IMG/VR virus record: IMGVR_UViG_3300027816_000052
Coordinates: 186,001-250,000 of that record
Reading direction: 5' to 3' (one strand)
Length of the DNA: 64,000 nt
This document shows, piece after piece, positions 3,682 to 52,338 of the stretch. A model generated the notes under the pieces. The model did not search any database and had not been told where the DNA came from. It saw nothing but the letters and a program-made list of their open reading frames with translations. Made by a program: the position numbers and the translations under genes. How positions within the stretch are numbered: position 1 is the first letter of the stretch; every line of letters begins with the position of its first letter.

Positions 3682-6318
3682 ATGTCTTATCAATATTGTA
3701 GTGGTGGTTCTTATTGCTTTTCTTCAAACACTACTAGTGTAACAGCAAGTACTATTGGTTGTTTATCTAAAGTAGATAATGTTCAATATAGTATTAATGG
3801 TACAAGAATCTATAATACAAATTTTACTAATGAATCGATTTATGCTGAATTTCCATCTGACCCCGGATTTTTGGGTATTCAAGCGAATTTAACTTCACCA
3901 GCAACTCAGTGGGGATCAACAGGAAATTCAATTTTTGGTCCCATGAATAGACAAGCTGTTTGGTATGACGGAGATTGCAATGGGTCAACAGAAATAATTT
4001 CAGGTGAATTAACTCTTAGTTATTATTTTTATAATTCAGGAACAACAAATCAGTATTATCTAGGTTTTGGGGCTTGGATTTATCCAACAGGACAAATAAA
4101 TTTAACAATAAATAATGATATTATTTTATCTGGTGATGCGTCTATAATTGGTTCAAATTCACAACTCTATCATAGATTTTGGCACATAATTCCAATTACT
4201 TTACTATCTTGTGATAATCATATTAATTTAACAATTACTTCGTCAGGTATTATTCAAAATGCGGTTGGTTTAGTAATATATGATAGCACATATTCTGAAA
4301 TTATTAATGCGACTAATGATAATGATTTGGATATTATTTATAGTACAAATTCTTTATTAACCACAGCAGGAAAAACTGGACCTTTTGTTAAGGCGGGATG
4401 TCCGTCAGGATACATGTTAAGCGCAAATACGCTTACTGCAACTTGTATAACAACAATTTATACTGGTTGTACCTGTAATTGTTGCGATAGATACCAAATT
4501 GGTAGAATATTTGGAAATGATAATTTTGTGTATAATGATTGTAATAATCAACCAAAAATTATAACAAATTTAAATGCTGGTGAATCAATACAAATTTGTG
4601 CATGTTCTATAATAACTCCTAAAACACTATTGGGTAATAATACTTGGAGTGCGGGTAATGGTCAATTTAGAATTGTTTTAATAACATCTTGTGATAGTAG
4701 TTGTATACCAATTCCCGATGGTCCTCCCCCAACACCAACACCAGAACCAACTTGTTCTGATTGTGGATTTACAATGATTTCAGTTGGTGATAGACATACG
4801 GTGGGTATTAGTGGTGATACATTATTTTCTTGGGGAAGCAATTCAGTTGGTCAATTAGGTTTAGGATATACTGGCGGTTCTTTCTATATACCACAACAAA
4901 TGATAGACCCAACAAGTGGTGCATACCCTTGGGTTTATGTAGAAGCTGGTTTAGAATCAACATTTGCAATCAATTCAAATGGGGATTTATTTGTTTGCGG
5001 TAATTCTTCCTCAAATAATGGTGGAGATCAACTAGGATTAAACGATGGTATATCTAATATTGATACATTAACTCAAGTCACCTCACCAACCCCAAATGGG
5101 TGGTTAAAAATATGGTCAAAAAATACAGCAACAATTGCTCTTAGAAGTAATGGTACAATTTGGGGAACAGGTTTTAATGAAAAATATCAATTAGGTTTAG
5201 GTGATAATTTAGATAAAATGCAATTTACACAGATTGGTTCTGATACAGATTGGGAAGAAATTGCTAGAGGATTATTTCATACGCTTGGTTTGAAAAATAA
5301 TGGAACTATTTATTCTTGGGGAACTAATTTAACAATTCCTCAGAGAAACCCATTAGGATTAGGTGCGGGACCAGCTAATCAAGAAGCTCAAATACCAACA
5401 CAAATTACAATACCAACATACCCATTATATTCAAATAGTGTTGTGTTTAATCAAATATCCGCAGGAAATTATCATTCCGTTGCATTAGCTGATAACACAT
5501 CAATATGGGGATGGGGACAAAATACCCAAGGTCAGTTAGATTGCTTTAATTGTGGTTCGGTTGATAATTCAAGACCGTTTCCTATGGATGGTGGAATTTC
5601 TGTAAATCCACCAAGTTCTCAATCTGAAGGTGCTAATACAAATTCAGGATATACATCAGTAATAGCTGTTGGTGATATGACATTAGCCATTACGTCTGGT
5701 ATAACTTTAAATTTTGCACCATTTACTGCACCAAATGGTGTGAATTGGACACCGAATTTAAATGGTGACAGAATTTGGACTTGGGGTGAAGGATATGGAT
5801 CAAATGTAAAAACACTTTTACAAGACAATATTGATAGAATTAATTTAGAAACAAAAAATGATTGGTGTTATGTCTGGGCTGGTGGTCAAGCGGAACAAGG
5901 CGGCATTGGAACTCAAAACTTAGTTTTTTTCGCAAAAGATATTAATGGTACAATATTTACATGGGGTACCAATTCATACGGTCAGTTAGGCGTTGGACAA
6001 AACCCAATTTGTCCTGTTTGTGATAATGACTATGTTAATCCAATTGGGTTGTGTTTTAACTCAATAGATTCGGAATGTCCATGTCCTGATTGCGAATGTG
6101 TTACATATACTTTAAGCAATTATTCTACACTTGAAGTACCGTTTACTTATATTGATTGTAATAACACATTAATAAATTCAATATTAGGTAGAGGTGGTCT
6201 TGGTCCATCGACAACAACTGTCACAATTTGTGCTTGTTTAAATACAATAGTTATTGATGAAAATATCAATCCTAATTTTGTTAATATAACAACAGATCAA
6301 ACCCCTTGTGAATCATGA
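3682..6318 (+). CDS. RCC1-repeat protein, probable virion/adhesion protein
   Basis: Repeated WGSNSVGQLGLG, WGQNTQGQL, WGTNSYGQLG and ISAGNYHSVAL motifs. Confidence 0.75.
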   Translation: MSYQYCSGGSYCFSSNTTSVTASTIGCLSKVDNVQYSINGTRIYNTNFTNESIYAEFPSDPGFLGIQANLTSPATQWGSTGNSIFGPMNRQAVWYDGDCNGSTEIISGELTLSYYFYNSGTTNQYYLGFGAWIYPTGQINLTINNDIILSGDASIIGSNSQLYHRFWHIIPITLLSCDNHINLTITSSGIIQNAVGLVIYDSTYSEIINATNDNDLDIIYSTNSLLTTAGKTGPFVKAGCPSGYMLSANTLTATCITTIYTGCTCNCCDRYQIGRIFGNDNFVYNDCNNQPKIITNLNAGESIQICACSIITPKTLLGNNTWSAGNGQFRIVLITSCDSSCIPIPDGPPPTPTPEPTCSDCGFTMISVGDRHTVGISGDTLFSWGSNSVGQLGLGYTGGSFYIPQQMIDPTSGAYPWVYVEAGLESTFAINSNGDLFVCGNSSSNNGGDQLGLNDGISNIDTLTQVTSPTPNGWLKIWSKNTATIALRSNGTIWGTGFNEKYQLGLGDNLDKMQFTQIGSDTDWEEIARGLFHTLGLKNNGTIYSWGTNLTIPQRNPLGLGAGPANQEAQIPTQITIPTYPLYSNSVVFNQISAGNYHSVALADNTSIWGWGQNTQGQLDCFNCGSVDNSRPFPMDGGISVNPPSSQSEGANTNSGYTSVIAVGDMTLAITSGITLNFAPFTAPNGVNWTPNLNGDRIWTWGEGYGSNVKTLLQDNIDRINLETKNDWCYVWAGGQAEQGGIGTQNLVFFAKDINGTIFTWGTNSYGQLGVGQNPICPVCDNDYVNPIGLCFNSIDSECPCPDCECVTYTLSNYSTLEVPFTYIDCNNTLINSILGRGGLGPSTTTVTICACLNTIVIDENINPNFVNITTDQTPCES

Positions 6319-15601: not shown

Positions 15602-16468
15602 ATGTCAAAAGTATCTGAACTTCAAACAAAATACGCTAAACAAGTTAGTGCAGCTATTTTCCAAAGTTTCTTACATGCTGATAAAACAGAAACTAAGAAA
15701 TATTTGGAATTTATGTGTAAACTTTGGTCGAATAGAGATAAGAACAAACTAACTAGGTCGGCTAAAGTAATTGAACTTGTTAATGATTTTGATAGTTGTT
15801 TAAGTTATCTTACAAATAAAGATATTTACTCTCCTGAATACACTAATCTTAAAATTCTTCAAGATAGGATTGATGATGCGATGAGTCGCAAATTAGAAAA
15901 AGAATTTGAACCCAAAAAACATGGGACAAAAATTTATGAGACCGAAAATATTTTAATTGTAAGACCGTTAACCCAAGAGGGTTCAGATAAATGGGGGGCA
16001 AACACCAAGTGGTGTACTACCGGTAAAAATAGCAGGTTTAAAGAATATTTTAGACGAGGCGTTATCATCTATTTAATAGATAAAAAAGCATCAAGAAATA
16101 GTGGATATAATAAAATAGCTTTTTATATTAATTGGAATAACCATTCTGTTTTTACGAATGATATTGAAGTATATAATCAACTTGATTCAAGAATTTATGA
16201 TAAACATATGTTAAATTCGGGATGGAATAGACAAGATATTATTACAATTTTTAATATTATTAGAACATATATGTTTAATCTTGAGTTCGTTTTTAAAGCA
16301 AAAGAAAATGTGTCAAACACAATCAATACATTAAATAATATTGATATTGATAAATTAATGGAATCTATTCATCTCATTAGTGAGTCAAATGTTGAAGATA
16401 GAGATTATGTTTTAGAAATTAAAAATAACATTGATTTCATTACAAATAAATTAAAGGAAATTATTTAA
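15602..16468 (+). CDS. Hypothetical protein with a PLT/xGxxTKWCT domain (paralog 1)
   Basis: LIVRPLTQEGSDKWGANTKWCTTG, shared with the genes at 17751 and 31895. Confidence 0.7.
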   Translation: MSKVSELQTKYAKQVSAAIFQSFLHADKTETKKYLEFMCKLWSNRDKNKLTRSAKVIELVNDFDSCLSYLTNKDIYSPEYTNLKILQDRIDDAMSRKLEKEFEPKKHGTKIYETENILIVRPLTQEGSDKWGANTKWCTTGKNSRFKEYFRRGVIIYLIDKKASRNSGYNKIAFYINWNNHSVFTNDIEVYNQLDSRIYDKHMLNSGWNRQDIITIFNIIRTYMFNLEFVFKAKENVSNTINTLNNIDIDKLMESIHLISESNVEDRDYVLEIKNNIDFITNKLKEII

Positions 16469-19218: not shown

Positions 19219-21546
19219 ATGAATATTTCAATAGAAAAATTAGATAACCCCTATGTACAGATTGTTTGGGAGGATTCACCAGAAAATTTCACGCAGGAAA
19301 GAATTAAGCGTGTCAAAACATATTTTTCAAAGAAGTATAATACCTCTAATGTTAACATTGTTTTAAAAACAATCCTTGAGAAAGAAGAAGAGGATACAAC
19401 TGTTGACACCTCTTTTAACATTCTAGATAAAAATTATCAACTTGATGTTGTTAAAAATTATTTAACTCAAAAAGGTCTTGAGAATTCTTATGAGGATGTT
19501 GTTGGAATAAACAACATTGTTGAAAATAATTTGGTATTAAGTAACCCAGATATTTCACCATTTAAAAAATGGTATATCAAAAAAATTGAATTTTCAAATT
19601 TTTTATCGTATGGTGAGGACCAAGTTTTGGATTATGAAACATTAAGAGGTATTAGTGTTATTGAGTCGAATCCAAAAAATTTCGGGGGTAAAACAATTTT
19701 AGGGCTGGAATTACTTTTATATCTATTTTTTAACTCAACATCTAGAACTTCAAAAGCTGAAGATATCTTTAATAAATTCTCAGATAAGAATAAGGTCACT
19801 GTAAAGGGAACTATTAATATTGATGGTGAAGATTATGTGATTATTAGAACCGCAGAAAGAAAATTAAATAAAACAGGTGAGTGGAATGTAAAAACCGAAC
19901 TTGATTTTTTTAAAGTTCTTCCAGATGGTGAGCTTCAAAATTTCACAGGAGAACAAAGAAGAGAGACTGAGAAATTTATAAAAACATCAATTGGTGAACA
20001 AGAAGATTTCTTAATGACTATTCTAACAACATCTTCCAATCTAGAAGAACTCTTAGAAGCAAAACCCACCGCTAGAGGTCAAGTTTTAAGTAGATTCCTT
20101 GGGTTAGATGTTCTTAAGAAGAAAGAAGAAATAGCTAAAGAGCTTTACTCGAATTATTCAAAAGGAATGCTTTCAAATGTGTTTAATGTTGAGCAATTAA
20201 AAAATGACAATATTGAACATGAAAAAATGATTGGTATTTTAAACGATTCTAATAAAGAACTTGATGTTAAATTAAATGAGGTTATCGAGAAGATTAAAAT
20301 CGGTGAAAAATACCGCGAAGATTTATTAAAAACAAAACATTCTGATATTGACAAAGATTTGATTATCTTTGAACCCGAAAAAGCTAAAAACGACATTATA
20401 AAGATAACCAAAGAAAAGACTGATTATCAAAAAGAATTATCCGTCCTTAAAGTAGTTGAACCATCGGAATTTTATCATGAGGATAAACATGATGAAGTTA
20501 AAGAAAAAATCACAACTAGAAAAAGTGAAGTTGCTGTTATAGGTAGTCAATTACGAGAAATTGATTCATTAATGTCTAAGTACTCAAATGGGATAAAATG
20601 TGAGCACTGCGGAATTGAATTAATAAATGCAACATATACGCAGGAAAAAATTTCTAGAAAAAATGATTTAACCGACAAATTAAATTTAATTAATAATGAA
20701 CTAAATTCATTATCTGTTAGTGAACAAAGTTTTACTAAATTAAAGAAAGAATTTGATGAATATGAAAAAGCAAAATTAATTAAGGAGAAATTTGAAGTTA
20801 GTATTGATGCTTGCGATATTAAAATAAACTCTATTGAGGAAAAAATTAATCGATATAATGATGCACAAAGTAAAATTGCAGATAATCAAAAGATTGATGG
20901 TCTGCTAATAAAAGCAAAAGTTAGGATTGATGAATTAAATTCGGATAAAGATAGGGTAAACAAAGAAATTAATAACAACAATTTCCAGATTAAATCTTAT
21001 CATCAGAAAATAGATGAGAACAATAAGAGAATTATTAAAATTGCTGAAGAATTTGAAAAAGAGAAAATATATAAAATATATCTTGATATTTACGGTAAAA
21101 ATGGAATTTCAAAAATTATAATGAAATCTATGATTCCATTAATTAATTCTGAACTCCAAAGACTTCTTGAGGATTCCGCATTATTTACTCTTCAAATTAA
21201 AATAAATGATAAAAATGAAGTTGAGTTCTGGATGACGGATAACTCAAGCGGAATTGAAAAACTTATGGTCACAGGTTCTGGTTATGAAAGAACAATTGCA
21301 AGTCTAGCCCTTAGGTCCGTTCTGTCAAAAGTTTGTTCATTACCGAAACCGAATATTATAGTATTCGATGAGATTTTTGGTAAAGTATCTGATGATAATT
21401 TAGAAATGGTTGGAGAGTTCTTCAAGAAAATAAAGGAGTATTTTGACAAAATCTTAATTATTACACATAATCCATTAGTATCAAATTGGGCTGATAGTAT
21501 AATTAAAATTAAGAAAGAAAATAACATTAGTAAGATTGTTAATTAA
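19219..21546 (+). CDS. sbcC: Rad50/SbcC-like (T4 gp46-like) SMC ATPase
   Basis: NFLSY, GGKT Walker A, CEHC zinc hook in a coiled coil, GSGYE signature, IIVFDE Walker B and ITHN H-loop. Confidence 0.9.
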   Translation: MNISIEKLDNPYVQIVWEDSPENFTQERIKRVKTYFSKKYNTSNVNIVLKTILEKEEEDTTVDTSFNILDKNYQLDVVKNYLTQKGLENSYEDVVGINNIVENNLVLSNPDISPFKKWYIKKIEFSNFLSYGEDQVLDYETLRGISVIESNPKNFGGKTILGLELLLYLFFNSTSRTSKAEDIFNKFSDKNKVTVKGTINIDGEDYVIIRTAERKLNKTGEWNVKTELDFFKVLPDGELQNFTGEQRRETEKFIKTSIGEQEDFLMTILTTSSNLEELLEAKPTARGQVLSRFLGLDVLKKKEEIAKELYSNYSKGMLSNVFNVEQLKNDNIEHEKMIGILNDSNKELDVKLNEVIEKIKIGEKYREDLLKTKHSDIDKDLIIFEPEKAKNDIIKITKEKTDYQKELSVLKVVEPSEFYHEDKHDEVKEKITTRKSEVAVIGSQLREIDSLMSKYSNGIKCEHCGIELINATYTQEKISRKNDLTDKLNLINNELNSLSVSEQSFTKLKKEFDEYEKAKLIKEKFEVSIDACDIKINSIEEKINRYNDAQSKIADNQKIDGLLIKAKVRIDELNSDKDRVNKEINNNNFQIKSYHQKIDENNKRIIKIAEEFEKEKIYKIYLDIYGKNGISKIIMKSMIPLINSELQRLLEDSALFTLQIKINDKNEVEFWMTDNSSGIEKLMVTGSGYERTIASLALRSVLSKVCSLPKPNIIVFDEIFGKVSDDNLEMVGEFFKKIKEYFDKILIITHNPLVSNWADSIIKIKKENNISKIVN

Positions 21547-21944: not shown

Positions 21945-21983
21945 ATTAAATAGTTTTAAACATAAATATCAGAAAAAAATAAA

Positions 21984-22547
21984 ATGGAAACATACTTATT
22001 GTTTATTTATTCGGATTTTAAAGATAACGAAAATAAAATTACTTTAATTACCGAATGTCTTTCACCGATTGTTGTTTCACCAAAATTAAAATTTAATTAT
22101 GGTGATAATTCTATGATTATAAATTTTAAAACTGATTTAGAATTTAATGAATTAAAGGATTATGTTTCTGAAGTTCTCGCATTATTAGTAAATCAATATT
22201 TTTTATTAAATTATTCTGACAAGTTGTCAGTAAATATGCCAAAAAATTTATATAATCATTTATTTGATTTAGAGAACGAAACAGAAAATGTTGATTTGGA
22301 CACTAGAAATTTTATTCCAGAAAAAAAAGGAGTTGGACCAAATTTTTCTATTTTTGAAGGGGAAATTTCATTACCTTTGCCGATAAGCGGCACAACTTTT
22401 GGTGTCACAATTTTTACACCACAAGACAATACCGAAAGTCAAAAAATAAATTATACAATTGATGACATTTTAGATAAGATAAATAAAACTGGTTATGAAT
22501 CATTAACCGAAGAAGAAAAAAATTTTTTAAAAAACTCAAAATATTAA
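21984..22547 (+). CDS. Hypothetical protein with a C-terminal DUF6576-like domain
   Basis: IDDILDKINKTGYESLTEEEKNFLK. Confidence 0.6.
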   Translation: METYLLFIYSDFKDNENKITLITECLSPIVVSPKLKFNYGDNSMIINFKTDLEFNELKDYVSEVLALLVNQYFLLNYSDKLSVNMPKNLYNHLFDLENETENVDLDTRNFIPEKKGVGPNFSIFEGEISLPLPISGTTFGVTIFTPQDNTESQKINYTIDDILDKINKTGYESLTEEEKNFLKNSKY

Positions 22548-41986: not shown

Positions 41987-42399
41987 AGAAAAATAAAAGA
42001 TATGCTGGAATTTTGGTCAAATGTGATGACAAAGTTCTTTTATGTAAACGCTCTTTAAAAAAAATAAGAGGAGGTGAATGGAGTATACCATCTGGAGGAA
42101 TTGAAGAAGATGAAGCACCAATCGATGCAGCATATAGAGAATTTTTTGAAGAAACTGATATTGAAATAAACGAAGATATTGAATTAATTTCATTAATTGC
42201 AAAAATGACAAGGAATGGCGAAAAAATGAAAGGTCTTTTGTATGTTTATTTTTGTGAGGTTGATAATGAATTTGATGTTAATTTGGAAACAGCACAAGAT
42301 GGTCATGAACATTCACAGTGTGGTTGGTTTGGAATAGATAACCTACCAGAACCAATTGGTGAGCAGTTAAGAAAAATTGTTATAAAAAAATTATCGTGA
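41983..42399 (+). CDS. NUDIX hydrolase
   Basis: GGIEEDEAPIDAAYREFFEETDI Nudix box. Confidence 0.9.
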   Translation: MKKNKRYAGILVKCDDKVLLCKRSLKKIRGGEWSIPSGGIEEDEAPIDAAYREFFEETDIEINEDIELISLIAKMTRNGEKMKGLLYVYFCEVDNEFDVNLETAQDGHEHSQCGWFGIDNLPEPIGEQLRKIVIKKLS

Positions 42400-43469
42400 A
42401 TCATAATAAAATAAAGCAATATGTTATTGATGGTTGGGTAGAAGAAACAAAACACCCAACCAAAAATCTTTTTATTTATAATTACTCAAGAAAAACTCAG
42501 TTTGATAATAAGTGGGACGATATTACGCTTAATTGTCGTGGTCTCATTCTTGATGAGAACGGTAATTTAATTGCTAGAGGATTCTCAAAGTTTTTTAATT
42601 ATGAAGAATTACCACAAAATCACTCCGCGTTTAATATTATTGTAAAAGAAAATCCGATTGTGCAAGATAAATGTGATGGATCACTTGGAATTATTTATTA
42701 TTATGATAATAAGTGGAATGTAGCAACCAGAGGTTCTTTTATGTCTGAACAAGCGCAAAAAGCTGAGGAAATATTACATAATTTGTATCGTGTTGATTTG
42801 TTAAATCCGGAATACACATATCTAGTTGAAATAATTTATGTTGAAAACACGATTGTTGTGGTTTATAATGAGGAAAAACTATTTTTCTTATCCATCTATC
42901 ATAAAGATAAGGAACTTTCTTGGTCTCAGTGCAAAGAAGAATTTAATCGTTGTCAAATACCCAATTCACATATTGTTAAAGAATATGGAAATGTATTTGA
43001 TTATAAATCATTAAAGAATTCTTTTGAAGAAAATAGAGAGGGTTATATTATTAAATTTGAACCATCTAACTATCGAATCAAAATTAAATTTGATGAATAT
43101 GTTCGTTTGCATAAATTAATAACCAATTTTTCAAACGTTGATATTTGGGAATGTTTGAAAAACGAAGATGATATTTATGCGTTCTTGAATAAAGTTCCAG
43201 ATGAATTTGATAAGTGGGTTAGAGGTAAGATATTTGACTTGAACAAGTCTTTTGATTACATTTTATCAGTCTGCAATACAAAAAAAGATGAACTCAATAA
43301 TCAACAACTTGAAAATAGAAAAGATAAAGCATTATGGATACAATCGAATGTGATTCCAAGATATCAAAAAATATTGTATTCGATGTTGGATAATAGAAAT
43401 TATAAACCACTAATTTGGGATTTGGTAAGACCAAAATATCAAAAACCTTATTGGAATAAAGAAGATTAA
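42396..43469 (+). CDS. T4 Rnl1/RnlA-like RNA ligase
   Basis: CRGLIL, FSKFFNY, DKCDGSLG (KxDG), TRGSF, EGYII and KIKF. Confidence 0.85.
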   Translation: MNHNKIKQYVIDGWVEETKHPTKNLFIYNYSRKTQFDNKWDDITLNCRGLILDENGNLIARGFSKFFNYEELPQNHSAFNIIVKENPIVQDKCDGSLGIIYYYDNKWNVATRGSFMSEQAQKAEEILHNLYRVDLLNPEYTYLVEIIYVENTIVVVYNEEKLFFLSIYHKDKELSWSQCKEEFNRCQIPNSHIVKEYGNVFDYKSLKNSFEENREGYIIKFEPSNYRIKIKFDEYVRLHKLITNFSNVDIWECLKNEDDIYAFLNKVPDEFDKWVRGKIFDLNKSFDYILSVCNTKKDELNNQQLENRKDKALWIQSNVIPRYQKILYSMLDNRNYKPLIWDLVRPKYQKPYWNKED

Positions 43470-44897: not shown

Positions 44898-45272
44898 ATG
44901 GAATTTATTGAATATAATGGTAAGAGCGAGGATTTTCCGGGATCTTGGGATCACGTTCTAGCTGATGATGTAAAAACGTATGTTCCGGTTGTGGAACGAT
45001 TACATTGGGCATATGGATACCCAATCATAAGAAATATTTTTTATATGTTAGGCACAAATAAAAATCGTGATATATACTATGTTTATCCGGATTTTGGTAA
45101 CAAATATTATATATACGCATCTGAGGATTTAAATAAGGCTAAGTTCTTTGTTGAAAATTTTATAGTAAAGGGGTTAAATAACGAATTACTAACATCAGAG
45201 ACACGTATATTTGATTTACAAGAATATACGCAAAAATTAAGTCAAATCATTAAAATTGTTGAAGAAAAATGA
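44898..45272 (+). CDS. Hypothetical protein
   Basis: ATG at 44898. Confidence 0.55.
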   Translation: MEFIEYNGKSEDFPGSWDHVLADDVKTYVPVVERLHWAYGYPIIRNIFYMLGTNKNRDIYYVYPDFGNKYYIYASEDLNKAKFFVENFIVKGLNNELLTSETRIFDLQEYTQKLSQIIKIVEEK

Positions 45273-45778
45273 ATATAGTAAATAAAGCAAGGGAGTTTGC
45301 AATCAAAGCACACAATGCTGTGAATCAAAAATATGATAATCAACCTTATGAGGTTCATCTTAAAATGGTCAGTGAATTTGCAAGTCAGTTCCAATATCTC
45401 CTTAAAGATGATGATTTGGAAATAGCGCAAGCATCCGCATGGTTACACGACACACTAGAGGATATTTACTTTATAAGTTACAACGACATCAAAAAGGAAT
45501 TCGGTGAGCAAATTGCAGAAGCTGTCTATGCATTAACGAATGAAAAAGGTAGGACGCGAAAAGACCGAGCGAATGCTAAATACTATCAGGGTATTCGCGA
45601 TATTCCTGTTGCTAGATTCGTTAAGGTCTGCGATAGACTTGCAAATGCGAGTTATTCTATAAGTAATGATAGTTCAATGGTGAATGCGTATCGTAAAGAA
45701 AATGAGGAATTTAATCGTGAGTTATATTGCGATGAATTAAAACCCATGTTTGATTATTTAAACCAAATATTAAAATAA
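45269..45778 (+). CDS. HD-domain hydrolase, RelA/SpoT (Mesh1-like) type
   Basis: AH...QKY...PYEVHL, AWLHDTLED, FGEQIA and VKVCDRLAN. Confidence 0.85.
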   Translation: MNIVNKAREFAIKAHNAVNQKYDNQPYEVHLKMVSEFASQFQYLLKDDDLEIAQASAWLHDTLEDIYFISYNDIKKEFGEQIAEAVYALTNEKGRTRKDRANAKYYQGIRDIPVARFVKVCDRLANASYSISNDSSMVNAYRKENEEFNRELYCDELKPMFDYLNQILK

Positions 45779-45786
45779 AATGTTTA

Positions 45787-46149
45787 ATGAAAGTAATAAT
45801 AGCGGGTAGTAGAGACTTTAATGATTATGAATTATTAAAGAAAACTTGCGATAAAATTTTAATAAATCAAAAGGATATCGAGATAGTGAGTGGAGGCGCT
45901 AAAGGTGCCGATGCTCTTGGTGAACGATATGCAAATGAAAGGAGATATGGTCTTAAGATTTTTTTGGCGAATTGGGATGAATATAAAAAAAAAGCTGGTT
46001 ATCTTCGAAATATTAAAATGTCTGAATATGCTGACGCTCTAATAGCATTTTGGGATGGCGAATCTAGAGGGACGAAACATATGATTGATATAGTAACTGA
46101 AAAGGGATTAAAAACTAGAATAATTAGATATGGAATACAAAATAAATAA
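45787..46149 (+). CDS. SLOG (YspA/DUF2493-like) protein
   Basis: KVIIAGSRDF, VSGGAKGAD, AGYLRN and AFWDGESRGT. Confidence 0.85.
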   Translation: MKVIIAGSRDFNDYELLKKTCDKILINQKDIEIVSGGAKGADALGERYANERRYGLKIFLANWDEYKKKAGYLRNIKMSEYADALIAFWDGESRGTKHMIDIVTEKGLKTRIIRYGIQNK

Positions 46150-46669
46150 AAGTTTCTTCATAGATAGAGATAAAAATTCCCATTATTATTTAATTAATAA
46201 TGAATTTCGTGAGCAATGGGAAGAATGGAATAATTTAAGTGAAGATGATGAAAGAAGTTGGAATATTCCAGATTTTGTAATTCCGGTTAATAAACATCCA
46301 AAACATTTAACATTTTCAGAACCAAAACTTGGTGATGAATATTTTGATGATGGTCCAATCAGAGAATTTATTAATGATAATGGTGAGGGTTTCTCAGTTT
46401 ATCCAGAATATAATCATAGTGGTGGATTTTATTTTTCTTGGTTAGAAAACGGTGAAAGATGGTCAACAAAATATGGTTGGCAAGATATCATTGATATTAT
46501 TAATGAACACGATGAAATGCTAAATAGAAAACCTGTTGCATGGTATGTACAAAGAACAGGAGGTCTTACAGAAAGGGAAAGAAATATTAAATACGGTCCA
46601 TTTTTTAAGGAATCTGAAGCAGATGGGTGGGTTGACGAAAATCACACTAAAATTCCGTTATTTAGATAA
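46130..46669 (+). CDS. Hypothetical protein
   Basis: 179-aa ORF. Confidence 0.55.
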   Translation: MEYKINKSFFIDRDKNSHYYLINNEFREQWEEWNNLSEDDERSWNIPDFVIPVNKHPKHLTFSEPKLGDEYFDDGPIREFINDNGEGFSVYPEYNHSGGFYFSWLENGERWSTKYGWQDIIDIINEHDEMLNRKPVAWYVQRTGGLTERERNIKYGPFFKESEADGWVDENHTKIPLFR

Positions 46670-47039
46670 TACTATCTAAAAATATATTTGCAACCTCGTT
46701 ATAAAATAAATTAGCGATTTCATCATCTTCCATATTCTTATCTTTGATTTCATCATAACCCAAAGCATACATTAAATGCTCAATATCATAATAAGAATAC
46801 GGTAAACTAATCCAACTTGGTAAACCTTGCAAATACTCAATAAATGCTCGTTTCATACCACGTCTTTTGATTTCAAAATCATATTCATTCACGAATATTT
46901 CCAAACCGGTTTTTAATGGATTTTTTGTTGGTCTAATATCATACCCATCAAAATCTATATTATCCACAATAAAATCTTTTAAATTATTTTGTCTATCCGA
47001 TTCCTTTAAAAGTTTTTTAATTTTTGTTCTTATATTCAT
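46662..47039 (-). CDS. Hypothetical late protein
   Basis: MNIRTKIKKLLKES; GTATTTAT upstream on the minus strand. Confidence 0.65.
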   Translation of the reverse strand: MNIRTKIKKLLKESDRQNNLKDFIVDNIDFDGYDIRPTKNPLKTGLEIFVNEYDFEIKRRGMKRAFIEYLQGLPSWISLPYSYYDIEHLMYALGYDEIKDKNMEDDEIANLFYNEVANIFLDSII

Positions 47040-47095
47040 TTTATTTTTTATATATAAATACTTATGTTTATAAAAACATTCTTTCGCTTAAAAAT

Positions 47096-48166
47096 ATGCA
47101 AATAATAAATAACAAATTAAAATATATATTTATAATAATTTTTGGTTTTGTTTTCAACATTAAAACTTTCTCACAAACAGATTTGGTATTTTATGATTTT
47201 AATGTATGTAATAATAATCCTGATTATATTTTTCCATATTTTAATGCAACACCTGTGACAACAACTTTACCACTTGGTTCGGGATGTAGTAGCATTAATG
47301 ATGGATGTGCAGCCGGATGCCCCGATTTGATTTGTACAAATAACAACACATCCTTTATAACAAAATCTTGGACTAGTCCAGCAATAAATCTCGCTCATTA
47401 TTATGAGTTTACAATATCAACATATCCAAATGTTTCGTTTTATTTAAATCAATTAAGTTTTAGTTTCAGAAGATCATCCACTGGACCCACCAACCTTGCT
47501 GTATATATGAATGGTGTTTCTCAATCAATATTTAATTCAACATCAACAAGTTGCGTTTCACTTGGTGCGGGAATTAATCAATTGGTGACTGGTTCAGCAA
47601 ATTTTAAAATTTATTTTTGGGGTGGCTCGGTCGATGGGACAGTAAGAATTGATAATGTGAAACTCACACATTCGTTTACAACTTTACCAATTGAGTTAGT
47701 TTATTTTAATGTGAGGTCAATTGAAAATAAAATTAATTTAGAGTGGTTGACATCATCAGAAGTGGATAATTCGCATTTTGAAATTGAAAAGTCATTTGAT
47801 GCGTTTAATTTCTATAAAATAGCCAATATAATTTCAATTGGTTACTCACAACAAAATATATTGTATAATTATACAGATTTTAATGTAAATAATGATAAAA
47901 TAATATATTATCGCTTAAAACAAGTTGATTATGATGGTGATTATACATATTCACCAATAGTTTCAGTTAATAATAATTTTGATGCAATTTTAATACAAAA
48001 TGGATTGGTTTCATTAACCAACCAACATGAATACAAAATAGCTAATATTTGTGATATCTCTGGGAGATTTATTCATGATTTGAATAATGGATCAGTTCAG
48101 CTAAATGCTGGAATATATTTATTAAGATTAAACGATAAAACCAAAAAAATTGTTTTAAACAATTAA
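47096..48166 (+). CDS. Secreted protein with a T9SS type-A C-terminal sorting domain
   Basis: Signal peptide ending TFSQ, an LPIELVYF...YYRLKQVDYDG module, and C-terminal ICDISGR...LNAGIYLLRL...KKIVL. Confidence 0.8.
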   Translation: MQIINNKLKYIFIIIFGFVFNIKTFSQTDLVFYDFNVCNNNPDYIFPYFNATPVTTTLPLGSGCSSINDGCAAGCPDLICTNNNTSFITKSWTSPAINLAHYYEFTISTYPNVSFYLNQLSFSFRRSSTGPTNLAVYMNGVSQSIFNSTSTSCVSLGAGINQLVTGSANFKIYFWGGSVDGTVRIDNVKLTHSFTTLPIELVYFNVRSIENKINLEWLTSSEVDNSHFEIEKSFDAFNFYKIANIISIGYSQQNILYNYTDFNVNNDKIIYYRLKQVDYDGDYTYSPIVSVNNNFDAILIQNGLVSLTNQHEYKIANICDISGRFIHDLNNGSVQLNAGIYLLRLNDKTKKIVLNN

Positions 48167-48214: not shown

Positions 48215-48889
48215 ATGTTAATTACAATAATATCTGATACCCACACAAAACATCATCACATTCCGAAAGAACATCTTCCGGGTGGAGACATGATTATTCA
48301 TTGTGGTGATATTTCTTCGCGTGGTTATAGAGAAGAGGTTAGATTGTTCCTTGAATGGTTTACCGATTTAGATTCCTATACACACAAAGTATTCATTGCT
48401 GGTAATCACGATTTCTTCTTTGAAGATAACCCACTCCAATCAAAGGAATTGGTTCAAGAATATTCAAATATAATTTATCTTCAGGATAATATGGTTGAAA
48501 TTGAGGGGGTCAAAATTTATGGCTCACCTTGGCAACCAGAATTTTATAATTGGGCGTTTAATCTTCCAAGAAACGGTGAAAAACTTAAAGAAAAATGGAA
48601 AGCAATACCGGAGAATATTGATATATTAATTACACATGGTCCACCGTTTGGTTGTTTGGACAAAACAATTCAGGGACAATCCGTTGGATGCGAAATTTTG
48701 ACCGAAGAAATTAAAAGAATTAATCCAATAATTCATTGTTTTGGTCATATTCATTATTCTTATGGTTATATGCAAAGAGACAATATTAATTTTATTAATG
48801 CGTGTTCTCTTGGTGAAAATTATGTTTATCAAAACAAACCTTTGAACATTGATTTGGATATGTCAAATAGAATGATTAGCTTTGTCTAA
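48215..48889 (+). CDS. Metallophosphoesterase
   Basis: SDTH, HCGD, AGNHD, THGPP and FGHIH. Confidence 0.9.
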   Translation: MLITIISDTHTKHHHIPKEHLPGGDMIIHCGDISSRGYREEVRLFLEWFTDLDSYTHKVFIAGNHDFFFEDNPLQSKELVQEYSNIIYLQDNMVEIEGVKIYGSPWQPEFYNWAFNLPRNGEKLKEKWKAIPENIDILITHGPPFGCLDKTIQGQSVGCEILTEEIKRINPIIHCFGHIHYSYGYMQRDNINFINACSLGENYVYQNKPLNIDLDMSNRMISFV

Positions 48890-50274: not shown

Positions 50275-50364
50275 GCAGGTGCGGTATTATAGCACAGAAC
50301 TTGATTTGAAAGACGAAACCTTTTTCTTTTCTTTTTGTGTGGTGGGAAAATAAAATTTAAAATA

Positions 50365-52338
50365 ATGAATAAAGTATTATTACCAAAAGAAGAAATTACA
50401 CAGAAGTTAGATAGAGATAAACTTACTTTATTGAACGCTTCTATCAAAGATTATGTGAACAACTTGTATGAAAATTCAAATGATGAATACATTATACAAG
50501 ATGGTGAACCATACGCCAATGGAGAATTACATTTGGGACATTTTTTAAACAAAACCTTGAAAGATTTTGTTGTAAAATATTACTTAACAAAAGGTAAGAA
50601 AGTTAGGGTTTCATTTGGTTGGGACTGTCATGGTTTACCCATTGAAAATAAAGCAAAAGAAATGAGTGGTGATTTAATTCAAAATGCTAAATTAGTCGCA
50701 ACCAAATATTGTGATATTCAAAATAAAACTCTTGAACTTTTCGGGATTTATCCAACTGAAGGTAGGTTTAAAACTATGGATATTGATTTTATAGAAAGAG
50801 AATTATATATATACCACCAACTACTAAATGCGGGTCTAATTCTTAAAAAGAATAAGCCTACTTGGTACTCACCAACATTAAAAACAGTATTGGCTAACTC
50901 AGAAATTGAATATAAAAAAATAGAAGATGAATCTTTGTATTTTCTATTCAACTCTGATAGTTTTAAATTACTTGTTTGGACAACAACAGAATGGACTGTA
51001 AACGGAAATCAGGCAGTATGTTTAAGTAATAATATAAAATATGTTAAAACTGTTGACAATATTATTTGTAGTGAAAGTTTTGCTATTGAAAATAATTTAG
51101 ATTATGATTTGTTTGATGTGAGTAATATTAAGTCATATCATAACCACAATGGAGATTTATGTCCAATTATTTATGATGACTACGTTTCAGATGATAAAAC
51201 AGGTATAGTACATCTTTGCGGTGGACACGGTGATGAAGATTATCGAATTTTAATGGATAATAACATAACCCCCAAAAATGTGTGCGATAAAATCGGCTTA
51301 TTAAAACACATAGAAGATTTTAAAATTGATGAAAAGTTTGTATATAAACGTGAAATTTACACACACGATTATCCAATTGATTGGCGTGAAGGGAATAAGG
51401 TGTATAAAGTATTAACGGAACAAACGTATCTTGATTTTGATTTAAACAAAATAAAGACTTGTTTAAAAGAAATAAAGTTATCATCAAAAGACAGAAATCG
51501 TTTATCAACGACAATATTTTCACGCAAAGATTGGTGTATTTCAAGACAAAGAAAATGGGGTGTTAAAATACCTAATAGTAATGATATATTGGATGTTTGG
51601 TTTGATAGTGGTTCTACATTTATGATGTATGATAAACCTGCCGATATATACATTGAAGGTTCAGACCAACACAGAGGGTGGTTTCAAAGTTCGATTATAT
51701 TAGCATCAATGATTGGTCGAGTACCAACAAAAAGAATAATAACACACGGATTTATTGTTGATAACACATTAGAAAAACTATCAAAATCAAAAGGTAATGG
51801 CGGAAGTTTGGAAAAGCTGTATGAAACATATAACCCTGATGTATTAAGACTATGGGTTTTACTGTCAGATTTTAAAAACGATATTGTCTTTTCGGAAGAT
51901 TCATTAAAAAACTCTGGTAAACAATATTTTAAAATAAGAAACTTTCTCCGTTATTTATTTAATAATCTATATATATATGATTATGATGAAACAAAAGTTG
52001 ATGAAAATATTTTTTTTAAAGTAAAAGAGTTGGAAAATAAATTTGATTTACTTGTCAATGAATTTGATTTGAATAAAGCAGTAAGGGGTTTTGTTGAATT
52101 TATAAACTATTATTCATCTTTGTTGACGGAGGATATTAAAAATGAATTTTATGAATCTGACACAAATTCCAATATGAGAATTAAATATGAAACAGAGTTT
52201 TACTATGTTTTAAAACACTTAAATAAACTACTTTTTTCGATTTTACCATTTCTTTCTATGGAAATAAAAAAAGCGTGGGAAGAAAAAAGAAAAGAAAAAG
52301 ATTTACATGTAGGGACTATATTTGGAAACGAGATGTAG
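50365..52338 (+). CDS. ileS: Minimal isoleucyl-tRNA synthetase (cassette 1)
   Basis: DGEPYANGELHLGH, GWDCHGLPIE, WTTTEWT, DWCISRQR, DVWFDSG, EGSDQHRGWFQS and KLSKS. Likely start at 50365 (657 aa). Confidence 0.9.
   Translation: MNKVLLPKEEITQKLDRDKLTLLNASIKDYVNNLYENSNDEYIIQDGEPYANGELHLGHFLNKTLKDFVVKYYLTKGKKVRVSFGWDCHGLPIENKAKEMSGDLIQNAKLVATKYCDIQNKTLELFGIYPTEGRFKTMDIDFIERELYIYHQLLNAGLILKKNKPTWYSPTLKTVLANSEIEYKKIEDESLYFLFNSDSFKLLVWTTTEWTVNGNQAVCLSNNIKYVKTVDNIICSESFAIENNLDYDLFDVSNIKSYHNHNGDLCPIIYDDYVSDDKTGIVHLCGGHGDEDYRILMDNNITPKNVCDKIGLLKHIEDFKIDEKFVYKREIYTHDYPIDWREGNKVYKVLTEQTYLDFDLNKIKTCLKEIKLSSKDRNRLSTTIFSRKDWCISRQRKWGVKIPNSNDILDVWFDSGSTFMMYDKPADIYIEGSDQHRGWFQSSIILASMIGRVPTKRIITHGFIVDNTLEKLSKSKGNGGSLEKLYETYNPDVLRLWVLLSDFKNDIVFSEDSLKNSGKQYFKIRNFLRYLFNNLYIYDYDETKVDENIFFKVKELENKFDLLVNEFDLNKAVRGFVEFINYYSSLLTEDIKNEFYESDTNSNMRIKYETEFYYVLKHLNKLLFSILPFLSMEIKKAWEEKRKEKDLHVGTIFGNEM

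What the first reader, a model, noticed from the sequence alone, without database searches (positions are those of the whole stretch)
47096..48166. Phage-encoded cargo for the host type IX secretion system
Seen: a Sec signal peptide, a Cys-containing beta-rich domain, the LPIELxxF...YYRLKQVDYDG module and a compact type-A CTD. Known: such CTDs route proteins through the Bacteroidota T9SS, which also exports SprB. Inference: the phage places its own protein on the infected cell surface (superinfection exclusion, receptor masking or T9SS jamming).
Basis: partly seen in the sequence, partly recalled or inferred. Interest (0 to 1): 0.65.

Follow-up and report, generated by a model that had tools for sequence, protein, structure and literature searches.

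The report
Phage gene for a T9SS-exported binding protein

Summary
The ORF at 47096-48166 (+) is real. It encodes 356 aa in four parts:
- a Sec signal peptide ending FSQ, with an invariant Gln at +1 (the Bacteroidetes "Q-rule");
- a six-Cys jelly-roll domain with a carbohydrate-binding-module-like (CBM-like) fold;
- an FN3-fold module (LPIEL...YYRLKQVDYDG);
- a compact 60-aa C-terminal beta-sandwich.

The tail misses the curated HMM cut-offs (TIGR04183 18.2 vs 23 bits; PF18962 no hit). Five other results identify it as a type A CTD:
- 12 of 14 orthologs give the same sub-threshold hit;
- hhalign against bona fide CTDs gives 94% probability;
- the top PDB sequence hits are the HBP35 and RemA CTDs;
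- the top structural hits are the RgpB, HBP35 and RemZ CTDs;
- bacterial homologs with the same three-domain layout carry a passing PF18962 at that position.

The genome is an IMG/VR virus record with a terminase and 22 tRNAs. It also encodes a type B CTD protein that passes its cut-offs, and a paralog with the same FN3 module. Orthologs sit on other phage contigs, and dN/dS is 0.23.

Routing through the host T9SS is therefore well supported but inferred. Superinfection exclusion, receptor masking and T9SS jamming remain speculation. Phage T9SS cargo has been reported before (Bellas 2020; de Jonge 2019), so this is a new member of a known kind.

The parts
47040..47095 (.). 56-bp AT-rich divergent intergenic region between the minus-strand 125-aa ORF (46662-47039) and the target gene. 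It is the presumed promoter region. No convincing promoter was called.
   Evidence: the sigma-70 scan found no more sites than shuffled sequence; the Bacteroidota promoter type is not covered by the tool
47096..47173 (+). Sec/SPase I signal peptide, residues 1-26, with predicted cleavage ...T-F-S | Q27. There is no lipobox Cys.
   Evidence: Q27 is invariant in 14 orthologs, which fits the Bacteroidetes Q-rule (PMC5837995).
47174..47683 (+). Passenger domain, residues 27-196: a beta jelly roll with a CBM-like fold and six conserved Cys (three putative disulfides). The Cys-rich loop at residues 63-85 is modelled poorly.
   Evidence: AF2 model. VIA-align: CBM22 2w5f Z 11.5, rmsd 2.7 over 130 residues; also CBM61, CBM27 and reelin repeats. 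ESM Atlas TM 0.72-0.81 to domains of PF18962 or PEP-CTERM proteins. Profile search: 351 distant relatives.
47684..47983 (+). FN3-fold module, residues 197-296 (LPIELVYF ... YYRLKQVDYDG). No Pfam model covers it. It is widespread directly upstream of type A CTDs.
   Evidence: (FN3 matches at Z 10-11)
47984..48166 (+). Compact T9SS type A-like C-terminal domain, residues 297-356, a seven-strand beta-sandwich, plus the stop codon. Motifs D (DISGRFIH) and E (GIYLLRL...KKIVL) are present. The PNP motif is replaced by QNG.

Best explanation
The gene is an accessory, non-structural gene of a huge freshwater phage that infects a T9SS-bearing Bacteroidota host. It derives from a common bacterial surface-protein layout: jelly-roll domain, FN3-like module, type A CTD.

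Proposed pathway; every step is inferred from sequence and fold:
1. The preprotein crosses the inner membrane through Sec.
2. Signal peptidase I cuts after Ser26 and exposes Gln27, which the host glutaminyl cyclase can convert to pyroglutamate.
3. The passenger folds in the periplasm and forms up to three disulfides.
4. The 60-residue C-terminal beta-sandwich is recognised by the host PorV/SprA translocon.
5. The protein reaches the cell surface, where the CTD is removed. The protein is then either anchored or released.

The passenger has no catalytic domain and has a CBM-like fold. It therefore most likely acts by binding a glycan or another surface ligand, changing the surface of the infected cell or its surroundings for the phage's benefit. 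Masking a receptor or blocking superinfection is one plausible version of this, but no data single it out.
For: Phage origin:
- Virus record, terminase hit at 38.8 bits, 22 tRNAs.
- Orthologs at 41-90% identity lie on phage-like contigs with Terminase_6N, IF3, SmpB and RNA ligase.

Gene under selection: dN/dS 0.23 against the 90%-identical ortholog.

Signal peptide with invariant +1 Gln.

Evidence for the CTD:
- TIGR04183 is the only consistent family hit, found in 12 of 14 orthologs.
- hhalign of the ortholog tails against 19 bacterial PF18962 CTDs gives probability 94.1%, E 1.3e-7.
- A profile of the tail searched against PDB sequences ranks the HBP35 CTD and the RemA CTD first and second, at non-significant E 0.11 and 0.51.
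- The tail alone folds at pLDDT 91 with seven strands.
- Foldseek ranks 1, 3, 4, 5 and 6 are the RgpB, HBP35, RgpB, RemZ and NucA CTDs.
- VIA-align over 48,161 chains ranks the RgpB CTD first (Z 7.2, rmsd 2.6 over 60 residues) and HBP35 second (Z 6.3). These values lie within the spread among genuine CTDs (PMC11285876).

Bacterial and phage counterparts:
- Bacterial proteins P0146 and P0153 share 33-35% identity over the jelly roll and FN3 module and carry a passing PF18962 at the same position. P0146 lies on a bacterial contig that also carries GldH.
- The same phage has a type B CTD protein: PF13585 at 53.3 bits and TIGR04131 at 38.2 bits, both over their cut-offs.
- Four huge phages carry the same cassette, and one of them passes TIGR04183 at 32.7 bits.
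Against: - The curated thresholds for the CTD are not met by this protein or by any of its 13 orthologs, and PF18962 gives no hit.
- The structural scores are modest (Foldseek E 0.03, Z 7.2), and small Ig-like sandwiches are common folds.
- An HMM that I built from 19 bacterial CTDs did not hit the ORF.
- The host is unknown, so the presence of a T9SS is inferred only from the phage's own genes.
- Expression evidence is weak. Contigs from one of four metatranscriptomes cover parts of the gene, and DNA carry-over cannot be excluded.
- No ligand or binding site was identified.
Confidence: 0.65

Rival explanations
1. Secreted nutrient-acquisition helper, in the style of an auxiliary metabolic gene. 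The protein is released through the T9SS as a soluble or loosely attached polysaccharide-binding protein. It tethers the infected cell to particles or polymers and so sustains host metabolism during the long infection cycle of a huge phage.
For: - CBM-like fold of the passenger.
- Many type A CTD proteins of Bacteroidota are polysaccharide-utilisation proteins (my own knowledge of the field).
- The previously reported phage cargo included an endoglucanase and a GH39 (PMC7468147).
Against: - There is no catalytic domain.
- The closest bacterial relatives are uncharacterised.
- The fold alone does not show sugar binding.
Confidence: 0.2
2. Virion protein. The FN3 and CBM-like domains decorate the capsid or a tail fibre, and the C-terminal sandwich is just another Ig-like domain rather than a secretion signal.
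For: - FN3/Ig and CBM-like domains are common on phage tails.
- Lower-ranked BFVD matches include minor tail proteins.
Against: - A cleavable signal peptide with +1 Gln is conserved in all orthologs.
- The immediate neighbours in G000 and in the close ortholog's contigs (L003-L005) are an HD hydrolase, a SLOG protein, a metallophosphoesterase, an RNA ligase and an IleRS-like gene, not structural genes.
- The position relative to the terminase is not conserved.
- The best BFVD and PDB matches of the tail are secretion CTDs.
Confidence: 0.07
3. T9SS decoy or jammer. The shortened CTD, which lacks the PNP motif, engages PorV/SprA unproductively and so blocks export of host cargo such as adhesins that serve as phage receptors.
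For: - The CTD is unusually short and scores below the family cut-offs in all orthologs.
- A paralog has an even more truncated tail.
- T9SS and gliding-motility mutations give phage resistance in Flavobacterium (titles and abstracts listed).
Against: - HBP35, a genuine secreted cargo, has an equally compact CTD core of 59 residues with a QNG-like start, and it is the best PDB sequence match.
- Bacterial relatives with the same layout are ordinary cargo.
- Nothing indicates stalling.
Confidence: 0.05
4. Passenger DNA. A recently captured host gene with no role for the phage.
For: - Bacterial homologs have the same architecture.
- The gene's position varies among phages.
Against: - At least 14 orthologs are retained on phage contigs down to 41% identity, with intact frames and an invariant Cys pattern.
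- dN/dS is 0.23-0.3.
Confidence: 0.03

Closest known systems
T9SS type A CTD cargo of Bacteroidota (TIGR04183 / PF18962), e.g. P. gingivalis HBP35 and RgpB, F. johnsoniae RemA
   Same: - N-terminal Sec signal.
- The terminal domain is a seven-strand Ig-like sandwich.
- Motifs D and E are present.
- These CTDs are the best sequence and structure matches in the PDB.
- An Ig/FN3-like domain precedes the CTD, as in RgpB.
   Different: - The protein is encoded by a phage.
- It scores below the curated HMM cut-offs.
- PNP is replaced by QNG.
- The core is only about 60 residues.
- Secretion is untested.
Phage-encoded T9SS cargo reported in 'Cryophage' (Bellas et al. 2020, PMC7468147) and in crAss-like BACON ORFs (de Jonge et al. 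2019, PMC6949934)
   Same: - Phage genes carry a T9SS type A sorting domain.
- They are interpreted as hijacking the host T9SS.
- The function is only proposed.
   Different: - Those passengers are an endoglucanase, a GH39, a PA14 protein and BACON repeats. This one is an unnamed six-Cys jelly roll plus an FN3-like module.
- This family is conserved across a clade of huge freshwater phages.
- It co-occurs with a type B CTD gene in the same genome.
Bacterial three-domain proteins P0146 / P0153 (metagenomic Bacteroidota, uncharacterised)
   Same: - Similar length (357 and 365 aa).
- Same order of jelly roll, FN3-like module and CTD.
- 33-35% identity over about 200 residues.
   Different: - They are chromosomal: P0146 sits next to GldH and purine-synthesis genes.
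- Their CTDs pass PF18962 at 41-49 bits.
- BLASTP did not align the N-terminal part of the phage domain, which includes the Cys-rich loop, with these two proteins.
CBM22 / CBM61 / CBM27 carbohydrate-binding modules
   Same: Beta jelly-roll fold, Z 10-11.5 over 130-139 residues.
   Different: - Sequence identity is only 8-14%.
- There is no family HMM hit.
- Ligand-binding residues were not identified.
- This is fold-level resemblance only.

Membership tests
T9SS type A sorting domain (TIGR04183 Por_Secre_tail / PF18962) | Score over the curated HMM cut-off | tested here: not met
   TIGR04183 scores 18.2 bits against a cut-off of 23, E 0.0018, residues 307-353 on model positions 15-70 of 72. 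Twelve of 14 orthologs hit, all below the cut-off. PF18962 gives no hit at E<=10.
T9SS type A sorting domain (TIGR04183 Por_Secre_tail / PF18962) | Profile-level homology to bona fide CTDs | tested here: met
   hhalign of A2 against A3 (19 PF18962 CTDs) gives probability 94.1% and E 1.3e-7 over 35 columns. The two best PDB sequence hits are the HBP35 and RemA CTDs, but at non-significant E 0.11 and 0.51.
T9SS type A sorting domain (TIGR04183 Por_Secre_tail / PF18962) | Seven-strand Ig-like beta-sandwich at the extreme C-terminus | tested here: met
   The tail model has pLDDT 91.3 and seven strands. The RgpB CTD is rank 1 in both Foldseek and VIA-align (Z 7.2, rmsd 2.6 over 60 residues). The HBP35, RemZ, NucA, RemA, PorZ and FspA CTDs are also listed. 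The scores are modest.
T9SS type A sorting domain (TIGR04183 Por_Secre_tail / PF18962) | N-terminal Sec signal peptide on the same protein | tested here: met
   Read by inspection and with a hydropathy script. The cleavage motif T-F-S|Q is conserved in orthologs. No dedicated predictor was available.
T9SS type A sorting domain (TIGR04183 Por_Secre_tail / PF18962) | Producer cell has a T9SS, and export and CTD removal depend on it | not testable with these tools
   The host is unknown. Indirect support comes from a passing type B CTD gene in the same phage and from the restriction of the FN3+CTD cassette to Bacteroidota, Ignavibacteriales and Chloroherpetonaceae.
Fibronectin type III domain (PF00041) | HMM hit and FN3 fold for residues 197-296 | tested here: inconclusive
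   There is no Pfam hit. The fold matches many FN3 domains at Z 10-11 and rmsd 2.0-2.6.
Carbohydrate-binding module (CBM22-like) | Family HMM hit or conserved ligand-binding residues | tested here: not met
   There is no HMM hit. Only fold similarity was found, Z 11.5 at 9% identity.
Phage (virus) genome | Hallmark genes and virus-type gene content | tested here: met
   IMG/VR record with CheckV completeness 85%. Terminase_6N scores 38.8 bits against a cut-off of 22. There are 22 tRNAs on one 256-kb contig. Other phage-type genes are an RnlA-type RNA ligase and an SbcC-like protein.

The most novel reading that the evidence does not exclude
A clade of huge freshwater phages carries a small toolkit of T9SS-addressed proteins: this type A cargo, a paralog and a type B cargo. 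The phage uses them to re-dress the surface of the infected Bacteroidota cell. The CBM-like protein would bind and mask a surface glycan or a T9SS-delivered adhesin that serves as a phage receptor, giving superinfection exclusion or protecting progeny from adsorbing to lysing cells.
Probability: 0.2. Interest if true: 0.7.

Novelty: new member of a known kind. Interest (0 to 1): 0.45.

Why it matters
No phage-encoded T9SS substrate has been functionally characterised in the literature I could search. In Flavobacterium, mutations in T9SS and gliding-motility genes accompany phage resistance (titles and abstracts listed).

This is a conserved, small and easily expressed phage protein with a clear Sec signal and CTD. 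It gives a tractable test of whether phages use the T9SS to alter the host surface. The FN3+CTD cassette, which no Pfam model covers, may also be a portable export tag of practical use.

The idea itself has been published, and automatic annotations already name "secretion system C-terminal sorting domain" in uncultured phages. The advance would therefore be incremental unless a function is shown.

Tried and rejected
- The longer TTG start at 47024 was rejected. It overlaps the divergent ORF and no ortholog has an equivalent.
- PHROGs and Pfam gave nothing for the protein.
- megablast of 15 kb of the window against the phage collection found no match.
- A word search with the N-domain found only the phage orthologs. 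The full profile search overturned that impression of clade restriction by finding 351 distant bacterial relatives.
- My own HMM of 19 bacterial CTDs did not detect the tail, so that test gave no support.
- Whole-model Foldseek gave only generic multi-domain beta-sandwich matches, such as GH2 enzymes with TM about 0.2. Per-domain searches were needed.
- The sigma-70 promoter and terminator scan was no better than shuffled sequence.
- No PorP/SprF partner for the type B cargo is encoded in the phage.
- Host identification through genome contigs gave only a broad distribution across Bacteroidota, Ignavibacteriales and Chloroherpetonaceae, not a host.
- The metatranscriptome contigs were too sparse to show transcription of the gene.
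- No complex prediction was attempted, because no host PorV or SprA sequence is known.

Full report
**The ORF.** The window is bases 186001-250000 of a single 256,029-bp contig with 29.9% GC and 22 tRNA genes. The ORF runs from ATG 47096 to the stop at 48164-48166 on the + strand and encodes 356 aa (P0001). A longer TTG start at 47024 would overlap the divergent 125-aa ORF (46662-47039, minus strand), and no ortholog has a counterpart to it.

**Is it a phage?** Yes.
- The genome tool labels the contig an IMG/VR virus record, linear, with CheckV completeness 85%.
- A Terminase_6N match lies at C1:50972-51724, at 38.8 bits against a cut-off of 22.
- The neighbours of the gene are typical huge-phage accessory genes: an RnlA-type RNA ligase (42396-43469), an HD hydrolase (45269-45778), a YspA/SLOG protein (45787-46149), a calcineurin-like phosphoesterase (48215-48889) and a shortened IleRS-like gene (50335-52338).
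- tblastn against the phage collection found only partial matches in four uncultured phages of 462-642 kb.

**Family.** The word-index search returned 13 full-length orthologs of 329-353 aa at 41-90% identity. None has a Pfam annotation. It also returned hundreds of bacterial "T9SS type A sorting domain" proteins that match only the C-terminal 25-60% of the query.

Ortholog contexts are phage-like:
- one lies three genes from a Terminase_6N on a 45-kb contig;
- the 90%-identical one is syntenic with the window (RNA ligase, the small reverse ORF, the phosphoesterase);
- a more distant one lies on 48-52-kb contigs with IF3, SmpB, RNase T and an RNA ligase.

The alignment of 14 proteins (A1) has 66% mean column identity. 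Codon analysis against the closest ortholog gives dN/dS 0.23, and about 0.3 or saturated against the more distant ones. The gene is therefore maintained by selection in phages.

**Signal peptide.** All 14 proteins begin with a short basic n-region and a hydrophobic core, followed by small residues at -3 and -1 and an invariant Gln at +1 (T-F-S|Q27 here). A +1 Gln after signal peptidase I cleavage is the Bacteroidetes "Q-rule" (PMC5837995). It has already been used as a host-adaptation signature for P. gingivalis phages (PMC10367356). There is no lipobox. No dedicated predictor was available, so this rests on inspection and a simple hydropathy script.

**Passenger domain (residues 27-196).**
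- Six Cys are conserved (38, 64, 71, 75, 80/81, 153).
- AlphaFold2 with the 14-sequence alignment gave mean pLDDT 76.8, all beta. Only the Cys-rich loop at 63-85 is poorly modelled.
- VIA-align over 48,161 chains matched residues 26-195 to carbohydrate-binding jelly rolls: CBM22 2w5f at Z 11.5, rmsd 2.7 over 130 residues; also CBM61, CBM27, a pectate-lyase CBM and reelin repeats.
- The ESM Atlas gave TM 0.72-0.81 to domains of proteins that mostly end in PF18962, or in PEP-CTERM.
- The word search saw this domain only in the phage orthologs. The exhaustive profile search found 351 relatives at E<=1e-3, 28 of them at E<=1e-10.
- Ten of these were scanned with Pfam. Six end in Por_Secre_tail (four over the gathering cut-off) and one in PEP-CTERM. 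The matched region itself carries no Pfam family.
- Two relatives, P0146 (357 aa) and P0153 (365 aa), have the same three-domain order as the phage protein. They share 33-35% identity over about 200 residues and carry PF18962 at 41-49 bits at the C-terminus. P0146 sits on a 61-kb bacterial contig next to GldH, PGI and purine genes.

The phage gene therefore looks like a captured and diverged copy of an ordinary, uncharacterised Bacteroidota surface or secreted protein.

**FN3-like module (residues 197-296).** The LPIEL...YYRLKQVDYDG motif is real and conserved.
- It has no Pfam model but an FN3 fold, with Z 10-11 and rmsd 2.0-2.6 against many FN3 domains.
- In phmmer alignments, most bacterial homologs match residues about 190-295 and then have 60-90 further residues, which is their PF18962 CTD.
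Many alignments run through to query residues 345-355.

The module plus the CTD behaves as a widespread cassette of T9SS lineages.

**The C-terminal domain (residues 297-356).** This is the crux of the finding, and the straightforward test fails.
- TIGR04183 gives E 0.0018 and 18.2 bits, below the cut-off of 23.
- PF18962 gives nothing.
- None of the 14 orthologs passes, although 12 give the same hit.
- An HMM that I built from 19 bacterial CTDs did not detect it either.

Five other lines agree that it is a type A CTD:
1. hhalign of the ortholog tails (A2) against 19 bacterial PF18962 CTDs, whose similarity to the query had stopped before the CTD (A3), gives probability 94.1% and E 1.3e-7. It aligns the DxxG+xh and GxYhhxh motifs.
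2. A profile of the tail searched against all PDB sequences ranks the CTD of HBP35 (5y1a, residues 292-336 of 344) first and the CTD of RemA (8gl6_D) second, though at non-significant E 0.11 and 0.51.
3. The tail alone folds at pLDDT 91.3 into seven strands.
4. Foldseek ranks 1, 3, 4, 5 and 6 are the RgpB (7pq4), HBP35, RgpB (5ag8), RemZ and NucA CTDs. VIA-align ranks the RgpB CTD first (Z 7.2, rmsd 2.6 over 60 residues), HBP35 second (Z 6.3) and RemZ fourth. The RemA, NucA, PorZ and FspA CTDs appear further down.
5. The rmsd and identity values fall inside the range reported among genuine CTDs (1.8-3.0 A, 0-30% identity). Structural CTD cores can be as short as 59-65 residues (PMC11285876).

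The PNP motif is replaced by QNG, as in HBP35. I conclude that the tail is a compact, divergent type A CTD, with about 80% confidence.

**Other T9SS-linked genes in the same phage.**
- A 505-aa protein at C1:37782-39299 (minus strand, outside the window) has a signal peptide and a type B CTD that passes curated cut-offs: PF13585 at 53.3 bits against 27, and TIGR04131 at 38.2 bits against 35. No PorP/SprF partner is encoded in the phage.
- A 248-aa paralog at C1:15047-15790 has a Q-rule signal peptide, a Cys-rich N-domain and the same FN3 module (64 bits with my HMM), but only about 23 residues after it.

Four huge phages also carry a signal peptide, a variable N-domain, the LPIEL module and a tail. 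The LR756500 protein passes TIGR04183 at 32.7 bits. The LR745206 copy is split across two frames. BFVD lists similar uncultured-phage proteins, one already named "Secretion system C-terminal sorting domain".

**Expression.** Contigs from one freshwater metatranscriptome cover 47219-47715 and 47890 onward at 100% identity. Three other metatranscriptomes cover the neighbours, especially the minus-strand ORF at 46662-47039, but not the gene. Contigs cannot show strand or level, and DNA carry-over is possible, so this is weak evidence.

**Mechanism.** Shown here:
- the domain architecture;
- conservation in phages and purifying selection;
- homology to bacterial T9SS cargo.

Inferred:
- Sec export and cleavage before Gln27;
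- periplasmic folding with disulfides;
- recognition of the CTD by the host translocon, followed by surface display or release.

The passenger lacks any catalytic signature and has a CBM-like fold, so a binding role is the most economical reading. Whether it masks a receptor, excludes superinfecting phages, tethers the cell to polymers or does something else cannot be decided from sequence. T9SS jamming is unlikely, because an equally compact CTD (HBP35) is a normal substrate.

**Novelty.** Phage-encoded T9SS cargo has been described before: an endoglucanase, a GH39 and a PA14 protein in "Cryophage" (PMC7468147) and sorting-domain ORFs in crAss-like phages (PMC6949934). This is a new, conserved family of that kind in huge freshwater phages, with an unnamed passenger domain. 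Interest is moderate, because the claim is sound but not surprising and the function is open.

Noticed in passing
G000:C1:37782-39299 (minus strand; outside the window; locus L007:1444-2961): A second T9SS substrate in the same phage. It is a 505-aa Cys-rich protein with a signal peptide and a type B CTD that passes PF13585 (53.3 bits) and TIGR04131 (38.2 bits). No PorP/SprF-like partner is encoded in the phage.
   Followed up: partly
G000:C1:15047-15790 (+; outside the window): A 248-aa paralog with a Q-rule signal peptide, a Cys-rich N-domain and the same LPIEL FN3-like module, but only about 23 residues after it, so the CTD is truncated or absent. A crude scan also flagged several other ORFs with Q-rule signal peptides, e.g. 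15797-16423, 21975-22544, 70072-70506 and 250312-250827.
   Followed up: partly
window 47684-47983 compared with L003: Between this phage and its 90%-identical relative, synonymous divergence in the FN3-like segment is far lower (dS 0.036) than in the flanking N-domain (0.30) and CTD (0.25). This hints at recent recombination or gene conversion of that module. The counts are small.
   Followed up: no
window 50335-52338 (+): A 667-aa class I aminoacyl-tRNA synthetase most like IleRS (TIGR00392 at 385 bits against a cut-off of 621). It matches model positions 32-476, and the C-terminal part matches separately, so it appears shortened relative to bacterial IleRS.
   Followed up: no
window 45269-46149 and 48215-48889 (+): An HD-domain protein resembling the RelA/SpoT hydrolase part, a YspA/SLOG-family protein, and a calcineurin-like phosphoesterase that flanks the target gene. 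The phosphoesterase is syntenic in the closest relatives.
   Followed up: no
window 46662-47039 (-): A 125-aa ORF of unknown function, divergent from the target gene. It is conserved in the syntenic relatives and covered by contigs in all four metatranscriptomes examined. One RNA contig ends at 47049, inside the divergent intergenic region.
   Followed up: no
G000:C1:1-100 and about 116494; contig 3' end: The first 100 bases of the contig recur exactly at about position 116494, and the contig ends in a poly-C run. These may be assembly artefacts or a repeat. IMG/VR classes the record as linear with no terminal repeat.
   Followed up: no
L011 (LR745206.1) 1188-2866: In this 635-kb phage the homologous gene is split. 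A 424-aa ORF (signal peptide, Cys-rich) and a 145-aa ORF (FN3-like module plus a short tail) lie in different frames and overlap. This is a frameshift, an assembly error or a decaying copy.
   Followed up: no
window 3682-6318 and 19219-21546 (+): An 878-aa protein with RCC1-like repeats (phrog_7220) and a 775-aa SbcC-like protein (phrog_77). Five other large ORFs between 1.8 and 13 kb and at 27-39 kb have no PHROG match.
   Followed up: no
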